From NCBI GenBank assembly GCA_965153285.1, contig OZ229110.1: 64,000 nt of DNA; one strand, 5' to 3'. The stretch comes from Podarcis tiliguerta (lineage: Eukaryota). The position numbers and the translations under genes are program-made. Below, piece by piece: positions 54,701 to 56,492 of this stretch (position 1 is its first letter; each line of letters opens with the position of its first letter). Under the pieces are notes generated by a model. It was given only the letters and a program-made list of their open reading frames with translations. It did no database searches and was not told the origin of the DNA.

Positions 54701-56492
54701 CAGGTAAAAAGGTAATAGAAAAGGCAGTTCCAATGGAACTCTGTGGTCATGCCAACCACAGTGAGCCAAACTGAATGCTTACTCAGGGAATAGTGGTAAA
54801 TTTGTCATAAATGAAAAAAGACCATTGGCTAACTTATTGAACTGCCTTGTGTTGTAAGAGAAGCTGTTGGTATAATCAATCTATTAAGATGCTGTGTTTA
54901 ACAATATACGGTATCCTATTTTTATTACTTGTAGTATATAAAATGTTCATTCGTTGCAGATGTTTGCCATCATTATTGTGTTAATTCTGAATCCTGCACC
55001 ATTGCTGATGATGGCAATGTAGAATGTGTCTGTCCTCTACGATATGAAGGTCCAAAGTGTGAAACAGACAAATGTATAAAATGCCATGGAGGGCAGTGCA
55101 TCCTGGACAAGGAAAGCGATGACATAATGTGCAAGTAAGTCTACATTATGATAAATAGTTAAATAGGAGGAAAATATTTTAACAGTGCAATGCATGCACA
55201 GTTAAACAACATGTATCAAAATAGTGGCACACACTATGGCTGACTACTTGTGTATCAAGTCTGTGGTTCAAATGTACTTGAACTTGAGTTGGTGCCATAT
55301 ATATGAGATTTTAAAATACACATATATACCAATTGTTCCGATCAGCACAGAGATTCAAAACAAGCCAGAAGGCAAAAAGAACAAATATCCCAGGAAATTG
55401 TGTGTGTGTGTCTGTGTGAATGGGAGGGATGAAAATCATTAGTACCTTTCACTTCCCTGCTAAAAATGTAACATATCAATCAGTAACTTCTGATTCTTAC
55501 CTGGATATAAATTCACATCCTTCAATCATTCATCTCAGAATAAGGACCTGGGCATGAGTAAGTCAGTCTGCTGTTTTCATATCACACAATTAGGATAATT
55601 GGCATGTGTTTTACTATGGAACTGTCAGGACCATCCAGATATGAACAATTTGCTTATCTTTGGATATTTATTTATTATCCAAGGGCTTCTGACCTTCCTA
55701 TGCATTATCTTTTTTTCAACCTTGTACAATCAAATAACTGACAATGTAAACAACATGGGTTGGTAGTGACTTTGGTTTCTAGAATCTGCATTCAACAGTA
55801 ATAGTGTATCTAACAGTAATGATGTTTCCCCTATAGCTGCACAAATGGAAAGATTGCATCCAGTTGTCAATTATGTGATGGTTATTGCTACAATGGTGGT
55901 ATATGTCAGTTGGATCCAGAGACAAACATACCCGTCTGTCTGTGAGTATGCTGCTGTATCTGACAATCATTAGAACATTTTTACACCCAATCAATTCCTT
56001 GTGCCATTTTATCTTCTTTTCTTACCAAGTGTGGTGGTAATGAATTTTTTGCTGATCCAGGTCTTTTTTTTCTTGGTTTTTGACAGTTTTCAGAGTTTTA
56101 ACTGGAAATGATAGAGGGGTGATTGGCATCTTTAATTACATAGTATATGTTATAACTGCTCTTTGTACCCACTTGAATTAGTGCATAGATAGATATGCTG
56201 AGCATATTTTCTCCTTGTACGTTTTAGCATCAAATGTTATCTATCTATCTACTATCTATGCATACGTTTTAGCATCAAATGTATATCTATCTATCTACTA
56301 TCTATGCATTTAAAATATGTTCGGCAAAAAAAGGCAGAATATTTATTTATTTAGCTGTATTTTACTGAAATTCTGCAGATGCTCTGTGGGATTTAAAAGT
56401 CAGCGCTGTGACCAGAAAGTGAACCCTTGTGATTACTACTGTCAGAATGAGGGAATTTGCACTTTAACTGCGTTTAATGAACCGAGATGCAA
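648..56492 (+). CDS. LRP1B: LDL receptor-related protein 1B, partial spliced gene (31 exons; gene extends beyond both window ends)
   Basis: Spliced translation gives YWTD propellers, 12 LDLa repeats and EGF repeats, with LRP1B-type peptides such as [25 protein letters not shown] and [18 protein letters not shown]. All exon phases are compatible. Confidence 0.96.
2148..2499 (+). mobile_element. Sauria-type SINE, subfamily A
   Basis: tRNA-like head with GGTTCGAATCC B-box, (ACCTTT)n tail, 13-bp TSD tacattggggggt (2134-2146 / 2500-2512). Confidence 0.9.
3095..3217 (+). CDS. LRP1B: LRP1B exon (~58): [41 protein letters not shown]
   Basis: cag|GGT...AAG|gtga; 123 bp; YWTD-type repeat. Confidence 0.95.
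3699..4235. mobile_element. hAT-type MITE interrupted by a SINE
   Basis: TIRs CAGTGCTTTT / AAAAGCACTG with 8-bp TSD cctgcaat / cctgcgat. Confidence 0.75.
3733..4108 (+). mobile_element. Sauria-type SINE, subfamily B, nested in a hAT MITE
   Basis: B-box, core gtgcaagtagataaataggtacc, ACCTTT tail, TSD tactc(a/t)agggtaca. Confidence 0.88.
5507..5751. mobile_element. MITE with TAGGGTTGCCA termini (hAT-Blackjack-like)
   Basis: tagggttgccatat ... atatggcaacccta; internal third TIR copy at 5652. Confidence 0.75.
6084..6265 (+). CDS. LRP1B: LRP1B exon (~59): [24 protein letters not shown]...[12 protein letters not shown]
   Basis: tag|GTA...GG|gtat; 182 bp. Confidence 0.95.
8126..8325 (+). CDS. LRP1B: LRP1B exon (~60): [20 protein letters not shown]...MDGSRRNK
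   Basis: tag|A...G|gtca; 200 bp; overlaps ORF 8130..8369. Confidence 0.96.
9049..9083. repeat. (TA)n microsatellite
   Basis: Read directly. Confidence 0.95.
9946..10186. mobile_element. Tc1/mariner (pogo/Tigger-like) MITE
   Basis: TA|CAGTGGTACC...GGTACCACTG|TA. Confidence 0.85.
11004..11343 (+). mobile_element. Sauria-type SINE, subfamily B
   Basis: Same core and tail as other copies; TSD tatttattgatag (10989-11001 / 11344-11356). Confidence 0.9.
12600..13030 (-). mobile_element. L2-like LINE 3' fragment (boundaries approximate)
   Basis: aaggcctggttaaagagaaatgttt...gagcattccaca is the reverse complement of the motif at 7040-7075 and resembles a squamate L2-like 3' end. Confidence 0.5.
14025..14213 (+). 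CDS. LRP1B: LRP1B exon (~61): [25 protein letters not shown]...HSYRQPD
   Basis: cag|TT...G|gtaa; 189 bp; YWTD motif. Confidence 0.96.
14664..14768. repeat. 39-bp inverted repeat with 27-nt spacer
   Basis: Arms 14664-14702 and 14730-14768 are reverse complements with one mismatch. Confidence 0.93.
14774..15046. mobile_element. Probable degenerate hAT-type MITE
   Basis: GC-rich block starting cagggcc and ending gccgccccta, with subterminal tgcctcaggc repeats. Confidence 0.4.
15239..15387 (+). CDS. LRP1B: LRP1B exon (~62), EGF repeat: [22 protein letters not shown]...CTASQ
   Basis: tag|TG...CAA|gtaagt; 149 bp. Confidence 0.95.
16051..16144 (+). CDS. LRP1B: LRP1B exon (~63), LDLa: [31 protein letters not shown]
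   Basis: cag|TTC...C|gtaagt; 94 bp. Confidence 0.96.
16191..16440 (-). mobile_element. tRNA-derived SINE (Squam3-like, young subfamily)
   Basis: Reverse complement of the 32511 copy; A-box GTGGTGTAGTGG, B-box GGTTCGAGTC, (CTT)n tail. Confidence 0.85.
16441..16625 (+). mobile_element. Older tRNA-derived SINE (Squam3/MIR-like)
   Basis: Head gtggtacagtggttaagag, core cctaatctacctcacagg, L2-like tail gccgccttgagc...gggatataaat. Confidence 0.65.
18504..18745. mobile_element. Tc1/mariner (pogo/Tigger-like) MITE
   Basis: TA|CAGTGGTACCTCGGGTT...AACCCGAGGTACCATTG|TA. Confidence 0.87.
19401..19517 (+). CDS. LRP1B: LRP1B exon (~64), LDLa: [39 protein letters not shown]
   Basis: cag|CT...G|gtaa; 117 bp. 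Confidence 0.96.
21025..21144 (+). CDS. LRP1B: LRP1B exon (~65), LDLa: [40 protein letters not shown]
   Basis: cag|AT...C|gtaagt; 120 bp. Confidence 0.96.
21412..21531 (+). CDS. LRP1B: LRP1B exon (~66), LDLa: [40 protein letters not shown]
   Basis: aag|CG...G|gtgagt; 120 bp (AAG acceptor). Confidence 0.94.
22135..22482 (-). mobile_element. Sauria-type SINE, subfamily B
   Basis: Reverse complement of the 48081 copy; flanked by tgttcta on both sides. Confidence 0.9.
22848..22964 (+). CDS. LRP1B: LRP1B exon (~67), LDLa: [39 protein letters not shown]
   Basis: cag|AT...A|gtaagt; 117 bp. Confidence 0.96.
22993..23153 (+). mobile_element. CR1 LINE ORF2 fragment
   Basis: Degenerate ERDLGVLVD-KLxMSQQCDAA-KKANAILGCI-R-type coding typical of the CR1 ORF2 C-terminus. 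Confidence 0.65.
23867..24613 (-). mobile_element. LTR-like repeat, related to 28905..29395 (boundaries approximate)
   Basis: Shares colinear blocks (ccaccccaatct, attccag, gtgtcttta, tttatt, caatggaggg..tcacagca) with the second copy. Confidence 0.45.
24777..24883 (+). CDS. LRP1B: LRP1B exon (~68), LDLa: [36 protein letters not shown]
   Basis: cag|AA...GAG|gtag; 107 bp. Confidence 0.95.
25231..25350 (+). mobile_element. CR1 3' end fragment
   Basis: ttggaggtttttaag.agaggttggatggcc...gggtcccatccaattct..gattc. Confidence 0.65.
25836..25965 (+). CDS. LRP1B: LRP1B exon (~69), LDLa: [43 protein letters not shown]
   Basis: cag|AGA...G|gtaa; 130 bp. Confidence 0.95.
26146..26252 (+). CDS. LRP1B: LRP1B exon (~70), LDLa: [36 protein letters not shown]
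   Basis: tag|CA...GAG|gtac; 107 bp. Confidence 0.95.
27221..27353 (+). CDS. LRP1B: LRP1B exon (~71), LDLa: [44 protein letters not shown]
   Basis: cag|ATG...G|gtga; 133 bp. Confidence 0.95.
28905..29395 (-). mobile_element. LTR-like repeat, related to 23867..24613 (boundaries approximate)
   Basis: Colinear similarity to the 23.9-kb copy. Confidence 0.4.
29467..29589 (+). CDS. LRP1B: LRP1B exon (~72), LDLa: [41 protein letters not shown]
   Basis: cag|GG...G|gtaagt; 123 bp. Confidence 0.95.
30062..30292. mobile_element. Tc1/mariner (pogo/Tigger-like) MITE, opposite orientation to the 18504 and 45803 copies
   Basis: TA|CAGTGGTACCTCTAG...GTACCACTA|TA. Confidence 0.85.
30636..30758 (+). CDS. 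LRP1B: LRP1B exon (~73), LDLa: [41 protein letters not shown]
   Basis: cag|TA...G|gtgggt; 123 bp; this is the only nearby donor that keeps the frame. Confidence 0.92.
30957..31068 (-). mobile_element. Short tRNA-head / CR1-tail SINE remnant
   Basis: CR1-type tail (gagttggaagggacc) joined to a tRNA-like head (ctctaccaactgggcta). Confidence 0.5.
31941..32078 (+). CDS. LRP1B: LRP1B exon (~74), LDLa: [46 protein letters not shown]
   Basis: cag|AC...A|gtaagt; 138 bp. Confidence 0.95.
32511..32746 (+). mobile_element. tRNA-derived SINE (Squam3-like, young subfamily)
   Basis: gagccagtgtggtgtagtggttaagagc head with A and B boxes; highly similar to the 16191 copy. Confidence 0.87.
33005..33232 (-). 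mobile_element. Older tRNA-derived SINE (Squam3/MIR-like)
   Basis: ggattcgaaccc B-box, acaccacactggct head and (TTTA)n tail on the reverse strand. Confidence 0.75.
33850..33984 (+). CDS. LRP1B: LRP1B exon (~75), EGF: [45 protein letters not shown]
   Basis: tag|GC...G|gtat; 135 bp. Confidence 0.95.
34327..34685 (+). mobile_element. Sauria-type SINE, subfamily A
   Basis: Matches the 2148 copy; TSD tatggttatg (34317-34326 / 34686-34695). Confidence 0.9.
36416..36535 (+). CDS. LRP1B: LRP1B exon (~76), Ca-binding EGF: [40 protein letters not shown]
   Basis: tag|AT...G|gtaag; 120 bp. Confidence 0.96.
37150..37545 (-). mobile_element. L2-like LINE ORF2 endonuclease-domain fragment
   Basis: ORF 37179..37544 has [10 protein letters not shown] (GDFNIH motif) and [11 protein letters not shown] of the APE domain. 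Confidence 0.7.
37819..38060 (+). CDS. LRP1B: LRP1B exon (~77), furin-site region: [17 protein letters not shown]...[14 protein letters not shown]
   Basis: cag|GC...ATA|gtaagt; 242 bp. Confidence 0.95.
40353..40576 (+). CDS. LRP1B: LRP1B exon (~78): [29 protein letters not shown]...AIAVNPPKG
   Basis: tag|TGT...GG|gtag; 224 bp; YWTD motif. Confidence 0.96.
41839..41945 (+). CDS. LRP1B: LRP1B exon (~79): [35 protein letters not shown]
   Basis: cag|C...G|gtac; 107 bp. Confidence 0.95.
42624..42768. mobile_element. Short palindromic hAT-like MITE (related copies near 8840-8950 and 49432-49535)
   Basis: cctccagat.ttg..gact.ca.c.cccatca ... gcagtccagcaacatctggaggg internal inverted repeat. Confidence 0.6.
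43320..43860 (-). mobile_element. L2-like LINE reverse transcriptase fragment
   Basis: Reverse strand encodes YADDTQL (~43446-43466) and a degenerate GVPQGS motif (~43540-43565). Confidence 0.7.
44734..44850 (+). CDS. LRP1B: LRP1B exon (~80): [39 protein letters not shown]
   Basis: cag|GT...G|gtat; 117 bp. Confidence 0.95.
45803..46033. mobile_element. Tc1/mariner (pogo/Tigger-like) MITE
   Basis: TA|CAGTGGTACCTC...GAGGTACCACTG|TA. Confidence 0.87.
46226..46399 (+). CDS. LRP1B: LRP1B exon (~81): [23 protein letters not shown]...ISHRYKQTY
   Basis: aag|GA...T|gtgagt; 174 bp. Confidence 0.95.
46496..47337 (+). mobile_element. LTR-like repeat, copy 1 (3' end uncertain)
   Basis: TATA-like ctatataaa (~46658), AATAAA at 47196; homologous to the reverse-strand copies at 59625 and 63640. 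Confidence 0.6.
48081..48435 (+). mobile_element. Sauria-type SINE, subfamily B
   Basis: Full head, core and tail; TSD taccacatgata (48069-48080 / 48436-48447). Confidence 0.92.
49154..49279 (+). CDS. LRP1B: LRP1B exon (~82), EGF: [42 protein letters not shown]
   Basis: cag|CA...G|gtgggt; 126 bp. Confidence 0.94.
49432..49535. mobile_element. Short palindromic hAT-like MITE
   Basis: gcataggcaaact ... agtttgcctgtgc termini; ccctccagatgttttgggac / gtcccaaaacatctgaggg arms. Confidence 0.65.
50007..50171 (+). CDS. LRP1B: LRP1B exon (~83), EGF: [14 protein letters not shown]...[12 protein letters not shown]
   Basis: cag|AT...G|gtgagt; 165 bp. Confidence 0.95.
52293..52454 (+). CDS. LRP1B: LRP1B exon (~84), EGF: [29 protein letters not shown]...TGDRCQY
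   Basis: cag|GA...T|gtaagt; 162 bp. Confidence 0.96.
54960..55134 (+). CDS. LRP1B: LRP1B exon (~85), EGF: [19 protein letters not shown]...[12 protein letters not shown]
   Basis: cag|AT...AA|gtaagt; 175 bp. Confidence 0.95.
55837..55941 (+). CDS. LRP1B: LRP1B exon (~86), EGF: [35 protein letters not shown]
   Basis: tag|C...CT|gtgagt; 105 bp. Confidence 0.95.
56218..56308. repeat. Two-copy tandem duplication, 45/46-bp unit
   Basis: tacgttttagcatcaaatgt(a)tatctatctatctactatctatgca twice. Confidence 0.92.
56379..56492 (+). CDS. LRP1B: Additional symmetric EGF exon: [38 protein letters not shown](K/N)
   Basis: ttctgcag|A...AA|gtaggt; 114 bp, phase 2-2, six cysteines in EGF spacing, in frame with the previous exon. 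Confidence 0.88.

What the first reader, a model, noticed from the sequence alone, without database searches (positions are those of the whole stretch)
56379..56492. Extra EGF-encoding cassette-like exon in the membrane-proximal stalk of LRP1B
Seen: a clean 114-bp AG-GT exon, phase 2-2, missed by the ORF track, encoding [38 protein letters not shown] with six EGF-spaced cysteines. It completes the EGF begun in the previous exon and starts a new one. Recalled knowledge: canonical human LRP1B runs from ...DPETNVPVCL straight into CSTNWSGTQC..., without this segment. Inference: inclusion adds exactly one EGF module next to the membrane (the ectodomain shedding region), and skipping restores the human architecture. 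It may be an ancestral exon lost or rarely used in mammals.
Basis: partly seen in the sequence, partly recalled or inferred. Interest (0 to 1): 0.8.

Follow-up and report, generated by a model that had tools for sequence, protein, structure and literature searches.

The report
Seventh EGF exon in LRP1B stalk
The 114-base stretch is very probably a real, ancient coding exon that gives the brain receptor LRP1B a seventh EGF module next to the membrane; fish gene models already contain it, the mammal and bird models retrieved here do not, and whether it is optional in this animal could not be tested.

Summary
Window 56379-56492 is an AG-bounded, GTAGGT-followed, 114-nt open segment in phase 2-2, lying 437 nt downstream of the LRP1B exon 55837-55941 on the same strand.

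It is not a chance ORF. A whole-library protein search found the same 37 residues at 92-97% identity in three genomic ORFs of unknown taxa. It found them at 70-76% in fish ORFs and at 53% inside a spliced Chinook salmon model. In the salmon, Ameca and carp models the segment sits exactly between the EGF6 start and the last EGF piece before the transmembrane helix (alignment A1). The rodent, marsupial and bird LRP1B models, a second fish paralogue and LRP1 all show a clean 38-residue gap there. A review gives six EGFs for human LRP1B.

So the exon is ancestral to bony vertebrates and is already present in public fish models. One supporting sign is the densest YCAY cluster of the whole window just downstream of the donor.

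The scan has only noted this on the same stretch, not on other DNA. Interest is modest.

The parts
56379..56492 (+). Candidate exon E: 114 nt, phase 2-2. It encodes Cys5-Cys6 of EGF6, a linker, and Cys1-Cys4 of an extra EGF7.
   Evidence: sequence, frames. (relatives at 53-97% identity). (the allowed part 56434-56490 aligns inside the 38-column insertion of the fish models).
56377..56378 (+). Acceptor AG of exon E, preceded by a T-rich tract.
   Evidence: The ORFs P0001-P0003 of other genomes share the last ~20 intron-derived residues before the exon.
56493..56498 (+). Donor GTAGGT of exon E. Read through, it gives Lys then a stop.
   Evidence: All six genomic ORFs of other species end at the same Cys-Lys-stop, as expected if a GTRRGT-type donor is kept at that place.
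56507..56614 (+). Cluster of 9 YCAY motifs, 15-122 nt downstream of the donor.
   Evidence: 9 in 108 nt. The window-wide mean is 1.64 (sd 1.38) and the maximum elsewhere is 8, so no other 108-nt stretch reaches 9.
55837..55941 (+). Exon D: 105 nt, phase 2-2. It encodes the end of EGF5 and Cys1-Cys4 of EGF6. Donor CT|GTGAGT.
55942..56378 (+). Intron D-E, only 437 nt. It holds a 46-nt tandem duplication at 56218-56309.
54960..55134 (+). Exon C: EGF4 and the start of EGF5. Ends AA|GTAAGT.
   Evidence: Pfam EGF_2 E = 0.0012, 19.5 bits, below the family cut-off of 22.1.
52293..52454 (+). Exon B: end of EGF2 and all of EGF3. It is the nearest internal paralogue of exon E.
   Evidence: 12 of 18 identical with the allowed part of exon E.
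50007..50171 (+). Exon A: EGF1 and the start of EGF2. The acceptor was chosen by frame and by comparison with mammal models.

Best explanation
Window 56379-56492 is a genuine coding exon of the LRP1B orthologue, inherited from the common ancestor of ray-finned fish and tetrapods. When spliced between exon D (55837-55941) and the exon that carries the last EGF piece and the transmembrane helix (outside the window), it closes EGF6 with its own Cys5-Cys6 pair. It also supplies Cys1-Cys4 of one further EGF, which the downstream exon then closes. The receptor's small chain therefore carries seven rather than six EGF modules between the last beta-propeller and the membrane, which lengthens the rigid stalk by one module.

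Shown: the exon anatomy, its protein-level conservation, and its inclusion at this exact junction in fish gene models.

Inferred: that it is spliced into mRNA in this animal, and that inclusion is regulated. I put regulated (cassette) use at about even odds. The sign for it is the YCAY cluster 15-122 nt downstream of the donor, the position where NOVA proteins enhance exon inclusion in neurons. A change in the spacing or access of the juxtamembrane shedding site is a further inference by analogy only.
For: Anatomy:
- AG/GT bounds, a single open frame and symmetric phase.

Conservation:
- 92-97% identity in three genomic ORFs whose intron-derived upstream parts differ strongly (about 5 to 10 of the last 20 residues differ, against 1 to 3 of 37 in the exon; read by eye).
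- 70-76% identity in fish ORFs, with all six cysteines kept.
- Every such ORF stops right after the exon's last Cys-Lys, consistent with a kept donor.

Spliced models that include the exon at the same junction:
- Chinook salmon A0AAZ3PPC0, Ameca splendens MEQ2303247.1 and carp; in Aldrovandia affinis the model shows only the downstream junction, as its start lies just upstream of the segment.

Fold and family:
- A fold model of the Ameca protein gives the extra module an EGF-type hairpin at pLDDT 61-81, followed by the transmembrane helix at 86-92.
- Pfam EGF scores 32.2 bits on that protein, above the 21.5-bit cut-off.

Regulation:
- The YCAY cluster is the densest in 64 kb.
- YCAY clusters within 200 nt of splice sites predicted brain-specific splicing in 24 of 24 cases in chicken and zebrafish (PMC2014790).
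Against: - No transcript evidence from this species.
- No tetrapod spliced model with the exon was found among fragments of 162-555 residues. The bird models retrieved skip it, although these are homology-guided predictions.
- The taxa of the 92-97% relatives are unknown. If they are very close kin, their identity alone proves little.
- Full-length LRP1B proteins (about 4600 residues) were out of reach of the length-limited search.
- The YCAY count is a motif count only.
- All fish models of the exon-bearing paralogue include the exon, which fits constitutive use as well as regulated use.
Confidence: 0.8

Rival explanations
1. The exon is constitutive in non-mammalian LRP1B. Every transcript of this animal includes it, and the seven-versus-six EGF difference is a fixed lineage difference (loss in mammals and perhaps birds), not a splicing switch.
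For: The splice sites look good. All retrieved models of the exon-bearing fish paralogue include it. The fish sequences without it belong to a second paralogue with a distinct tail (P0024, P0030, P0041).
Against: There is an exceptional YCAY cluster downstream. The intron flank upstream of the acceptor is conserved among P0001-P0003, which is more typical of regulated exons (own knowledge). A sturgeon model with the ancestral-type tail lacks the exon and has the junction residue expected from skipping (P0032). Bird models lack it.
Confidence: 0.35
2. It is a relic. The exon was functional in ancestors but is no longer spliced in this lineage, and has only just begun to decay.
For: There is no transcript evidence here. 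Tetrapod models found so far lack it.
Against: The frame, all six cysteines and both splice sites are intact. Identity to fish is 70-76% after more than 400 million years (timing from own knowledge). The exon is conserved far better than the adjoining intron in three other genomes.
Confidence: 0.08
3. Exons D and E are used in a mutually exclusive way. Both are phase 2-2 and both carry Cys5-Cys6 plus Cys1-Cys4, so either one alone gives a six-EGF stalk.
For: They share phase and module content and are only 437 nt apart. Their second halves match at 10 of 18 residues.
Against: Fish spliced models contain both exons in series. Exon E is closer to the EGF2/EGF3 junction of exon B than to exon D.
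Confidence: 0.03
4. It is an alternative last exon. The donor is ignored, the frame stops two codons into the intron, and a soluble LRP1B ectodomain without a membrane anchor results.
For: Read-through gives Lys then a stop. An AATAAA lies about 130 nt downstream.
Against: A stop at that place follows automatically from any GTRRGT donor in this phase. AATAAA is common in AT-rich introns. Fish models splice onward into the transmembrane exon.
Confidence: 0.03

Closest known systems
Mammalian LRP1B (human and mouse, 91 exons, 4599 residues, six EGF modules next to the membrane)
   Same: Same gene by the order and sequence of the flanking exons. Exon D is 33 of 34 identical to the marsupial model. 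The transmembrane and tail parts of relatives are near-identical.
   Different: The mammal models retrieved (Scotinomys, Petaurus) run from the end of exon D straight into the last EGF piece. Reviews count six EGFs (PMC8469001; PMC3119793). Here one more EGF is encoded. Human sequence itself was not consulted.
Teleost LRP1B models that hold the segment (Oncorhynchus tshawytscha A0AAZ3PPC0, Ameca splendens MEQ2303247.1, Aldrovandia affinis AAFF_G00057080, Cyprinus carpio cypCar_00008864)
   Same: A 38-residue insertion at the identical junction, with the same six-cysteine pattern and 53-76% identity.
   Different: The junction residue is His in fish and Leu here. These are automatic annotations without any published description of the module.
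LRP1 (the paralogue)
   Same: Same overall stalk plan. Its EGF2/EGF3 junction is the closest non-orthologous match to the exon (P0017, 48%).
   Different: The LRP1 models retrieved (basking shark P0034, P0045) have no module at this junction.
Alternatively spliced O-linked-sugar exon of ApoER2 and VLDLR
   Same: A juxtamembrane extracellular cassette in LDL-receptor relatives whose inclusion changes ectodomain cleavage (PMC5331069). This is the best functional analogy for what a stalk cassette could do.
   Different: That exon encodes a Ser/Thr-rich glycosylated spacer, not an EGF module, and it is not homologous. Alternative use is proven there and unproven here.
LRP1B exon 90 (33-residue cytoplasmic insert), the one described alternative exon of the gene
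   Same: A frame-preserving optional exon near the 3' end of the same gene. Forms with and without it appear among the retrieved models (PMC3119793).
   Different: It is cytoplasmic, lies between the NPxY motifs, and is described in mouse.

Membership tests
EGF-like module | Six cysteines in the order and spacing Cys1-Cys4 then Cys5-Cys6, with the aromatic-x-Gly motif between Cys5 and Cys6 | tested here: met
   One search shows the exon's own Cys5-Cys6 piece with Gly-Phe, and Cys1-Cys4 of the next module. One search shows that the downstream exon of relatives supplies the closing Cys5-Cys6 with Trp-x-Gly.
EGF-like module | Match to a curated EGF profile above its cut-off | tested here: inconclusive
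   the fish orthologue P0022 passes PF00008 as a whole (32.2 bits against 21.5, four stretches). The extra module on its own is only hit by EGF_Teneurin at E = 0.022, below the cut-off. The window's own exon could not be scanned.
EGF-like module | Two-stranded hairpin fold | tested here: met
   in the model of P0022, strands 205-208 and 214-217 fall inside the extra module (residues about 196-229) at pLDDT 61-81. The alignment is shallow and the whole-model pLDDT is only 57.5.
LRP1B coding exon (orthologous stalk exon) | Lies on the gene's strand between the flanking orthologous exons, in a compatible phase | tested here: met
   exons A-D and E are collinear on the + strand. The phases chain correctly from 50171 through 56492.
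LRP1B coding exon (orthologous stalk exon) | Present at the same junction in spliced LRP1B sequences of other species | tested here: met
   three fish models show both junctions (salmon, Ameca) or the upstream one (carp); Aldrovandia shows the downstream one. No such tetrapod model was found within the length range searched.
LRP1B coding exon (orthologous stalk exon) | Spliced into mRNA in this species | not testable with these tools
Cassette (alternatively used) exon | Length divisible by three, so skipping keeps the frame | tested here: met
   114 nt, phase 2-2. Skipping gives CT+N = Leu, as in the marsupial and bird models.
Cassette (alternatively used) exon | Both the included and the skipped form observed from one gene | not testable with these tools
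   No reads. The fish forms without the exon belong to a second paralogue. One sturgeon model (P0032) lacks it, but that is a partial automatic model.
NOVA-regulated exon | YCAY cluster within 200 nt downstream of the exon's donor | tested here: met
   9 YCAY in 56507-56614, the densest 108-nt stretch of the window. The rule is taken from PMC2014790.
NOVA-regulated exon | Cluster conserved in relatives, NOVA binding, and a change of inclusion in brain | not testable with these tools
No CLIP or tissue data were available.

The most novel reading that the evidence does not exclude
An exon more than 400 million years old that adds a seventh EGF to the LRP1B stalk is a neuron-regulated (NOVA-type) cassette in non-mammalian vertebrates. 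By changing stalk length, it tunes ectodomain shedding or the reach of the ligand-binding clusters. Mammals either lost it or use it so rarely that the six-EGF textbook picture of LRP1B is a mammalian special case.
Probability: 0.2. Interest if true: 0.55.

Novelty: new variant of a known kind. Interest (0 to 1): 0.33.

Why it matters
LRP1B is a giant brain receptor and a frequent tumour-suppressor hit, and it is always drawn with six EGF modules next to the membrane. That picture appears to be derived from mammals. Fish models, and very probably this animal, encode seven modules through a small, frame-neutral exon.

If the exon proves to be optional and neuron-controlled, it would be only the second known splice switch in the gene. 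It would sit in the segment where the ectodomain is shed. If it is simply constitutive outside mammals, the point is only one for annotation and for comparative domain counts.

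Tried and rejected
Only 56434-56492 of the exon was used, by reference. only collected the ticket.

2. Taxa of P0001-P0003 (92-97% relatives).

4. Full-length LRP1B proteins. These are unreachable because the search for homologous proteins only sees 0.55-1.75 times the query length. Two searches with 295- and 317-residue tails gave no tetrapod model with the exon. The third search was not spent, given its cost and low expected yield.

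5. The joined spliced model of the window was not built or searched. Exons were handled one by one, by reference.

6. PDB search of the exon peptide gave only generic EGF hits (Notch, EDIL3, Spitz). The fish tail gave only Notch.

7. Literature. No paper was found that links LRP1B to NOVA, to a cassette exon in the stalk or to a seventh EGF.

8. The next exon (EGF tail plus transmembrane helix) was searched for in 56493-64000 and not found.

9. Simple tandem duplication of exon D as the origin was rejected as the best reading. The exon is closer to the EGF2/EGF3 junction.

Full report
**What is in the sequence**

The + strand of the window carries the 3' part of an LRP1B orthologue. It holds the ligand-binding repeats of cluster IV (about 15.2-32.1 kb), EGF and propeller exons, and then the membrane-proximal EGF stalk. 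I chained the stalk exons by splice site and phase:
- A: 50007-50171
- B: 52293-52454
- C: 54960-55134, ending AA|GTAAGT
- D: 55837-55941, 105 nt, ending CT|GTGAGT

It has AG at 56377-56378 and runs 56379-56492 (114 nt). One base completes the Leu codon begun in exon D, then come 37 open codons, two bases (AA), and the donor GTAGGT. The two other frames have stops. The six cysteines are a Cys5-Cys6 pair with the usual Gly-aromatic motif, a short linker, and Cys1-Cys4 of a new module. The exon that should follow (last Cys5-Cys6 piece plus transmembrane helix) is not in 56493-64000.

**Is it more than chance?**

I also sent it to the 1.84-billion-protein representative library (collected). The library search returned the following:
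- Three short proteins at 92-97% identity (P0001-P0003).
- Four at 70-76% identity (P0007, P0009, P0010, P0011).
- A 295-residue protein at 53% identity (P0013).

P0001-P0003, P0007, P0009 and P0010 are plainly ORFs called on genomic DNA. Each has an unrelated or only partly related N-terminal stretch (translated intron), then the exon, then Lys and a stop. That stop is exactly what reading through a GTRRGT donor in this phase gives. Their common end therefore argues that the donor is kept at the same place in six other genomes.

In P0001-P0003, only the last 20 or so intron-derived residues resemble the window's own upstream translation (ORF 56314-56493). About 5 to 10 of those 20 differ, against 1 to 3 of 37 in the exon. 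I read this comparison by eye, because the letters could no longer be sent to tools. The exon is thus under much stronger constraint than the adjoining intron.

**What the relatives are**

- P0013 is UniRef A0AAZ3PPC0 of Chinook salmon. Its 90% cluster also holds models of Ameca splendens (P0022, MEQ2303247.1) and Ilyodon furcidens. P0011 is from Stegastes partitus.
- P0013 and P0022 are spliced LRP1B C-termini: EGF3/EGF4 onward, the transmembrane helix, and the tail with NPxY motifs.
- Searching with P0013 and with a bird tail gave 40-odd C-terminal LRP1B and LRP1 fragments.
- In alignment A1, salmon, Ameca and carp (P0033) carry a 38-residue insertion exactly between the end of the exon D equivalent and the last EGF piece. 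Aldrovandia (P0027) carries the segment directly before that last piece; its model begins just upstream of the segment, and A1 misplaces it onto exon D. The allowed part of the window's exon (56434-56490) aligns inside that insertion.
- All of the following show a clean 38-column gap: rodent (Scotinomys, P0025), marsupial (Petaurus, P0026), bird (Apaloderma, P0028), a second fish paralogue with a distinct tail (P0024 from a Logan contig, P0030, P0041), a sturgeon model (P0032), and LRP1 (basking shark P0034, P0045).
- The junction residues fit the codon arithmetic. Fish read His when the exon is included (CA+Y) and Gln when it is absent (CA+R). Here the residue is Leu either way (CT+N).
- The Notothenia model P0036 ends in a tail that is the +1 frame of the fish exon (my own decoding). 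That model also runs into the exon.

**Fold and family**

- Pfam calls EGF on the Ameca protein above the cut-off. It places a weak EGF_Teneurin hit on the extra module.
- An AlphaFold model built from A1 gives that module the EGF hairpin at pLDDT 61-81, followed by a confident transmembrane helix. The whole model is poor (mean 57.5), so I did not run a fold search.

**Origin**

- The nearest internal paralogue of the exon is the EGF2/EGF3 junction in exon B. For the allowed part, 12 of 18 residues are identical with exon B, against 10 of 18 with exon D. The same ranking holds in fish.
- The best non-orthologous hit in the whole library is the same junction of an LRP1 fragment (P0017, 48%).
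- An internal duplication in the LRP1B line, before the split of ray-finned fish and tetrapods, is the simplest reading. The intron positions differ from exon B, so it was not a plain exon copy. This is inference.

**Comparison with what is known**

- A review states that LRP1 and LRP1B each have six EGF-like domains next to the membrane. It lists only two features unique to LRP1B: an extra ligand-binding repeat and the 33-residue tail insert (PMC8469001). PMC5331069 names the same two differences.
- The gene is described with 91 exons and 4599 residues. Exon 90 is its one described alternative exon, and expression is highest in brain (PMC3119793).
- I found no paper on a seventh EGF, on a stalk cassette or on NOVA control of LRP1B.
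- So the literature does not know the module, but public fish annotations do.

**Is it a cassette?**

This could not be tested. RNA runs under the species label exist.

No human sequence was consulted. The joined spliced model was not built or searched.

Indirect signs for regulated use:
- The symmetric phase of the exon.
- The conserved intron flank upstream of the acceptor in three other genomes.
- Nine YCAY motifs in 56507-56614, the densest 108-nt stretch of the whole 64 kb (mean 1.64, sd 1.38, maximum elsewhere 8). This is where the NOVA RNA map places splicing enhancers. YCAY clusters near splice sites predicted brain-specific splicing in 24 of 24 chicken and zebrafish cases (PMC2014790).

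Signs for constitutive use:
- Good splice sites.
- Every retrieved model of the exon-bearing fish paralogue includes the exon.

**Verdict**

- The segment is a real, anciently conserved LRP1B exon that encodes one additional stalk EGF (about 0.8 for being a functional exon in this genome).
- Whether it is optional is about even odds (cassette 0.45-0.5, constitutive 0.35, relic under 0.1).
- That mammals lack it in their gene models is supported for a rodent and a marsupial. Whether their genomes still hold it is open.
- A functional effect on shedding is only an analogy with the juxtamembrane O-linked-sugar cassette of ApoER2 and VLDLR (PMC5331069).
- It is a modest variant of a known architecture and is already present in fish annotation. 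Interest is about 0.33.

Noticed in passing
window 56507-56614: Nine YCAY motifs in 108 nt directly downstream of the exon's donor, the densest such stretch in the whole window (mean 1.64, maximum elsewhere 8). The same cluster was noted in the earlier scan note s1-830637.
   Followed up: partly
window 56218-56309: A 46-nt unit repeated twice in tandem (97% match) inside the 437-nt intron between exon D and the extra exon. It contains TATC runs.
   Followed up: partly
window 55837-55941 (exon D): EGF6 of this genome has Ile directly before Cys3, where the bird, marsupial, rodent and fish models have Thr (alignment A1). That position is the O-fucose acceptor of the C2-x4-S/T-C3 consensus (own knowledge), so this EGF may have lost the sugar site.
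   Followed up: no
proteins P0013, P0025, P0037-P0040 versus P0022, P0026, P0028: LRP1B tails occur with and without the cytoplasmic insert between the NPxY motifs in fish, birds and mammals. This matches the known exon 90 splicing. Fish have a different, Pro/His-rich insert at the same place.
   Followed up: no
protein P0036 (Notothenia coriiceps model): The model's C-terminal tail equals the +1 reading frame of the fish version of the extra exon. This suggests a frame error or another acceptor in that annotation.
   Followed up: partly
window 52293-52454 (exon B) versus 56434-56490: The extra exon is most similar to the EGF2/EGF3 junction of the same gene (12 of 18 identical) rather than to its neighbour exon D (10 of 18). 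This hints at an old internal duplication whose intron positions do not match.
   Followed up: partly
window 38028-38042: An earlier scan note (s1-830716) says the furin site of LRP1B looks altered here. I did not examine it.
   Followed up: no
protein P0011 (Stegastes partitus): This Ensembl-derived fragment enters the extra exon and leaves it a few residues before its end for unrelated sequence. That may be an alternative donor or a model error.
   Followed up: no
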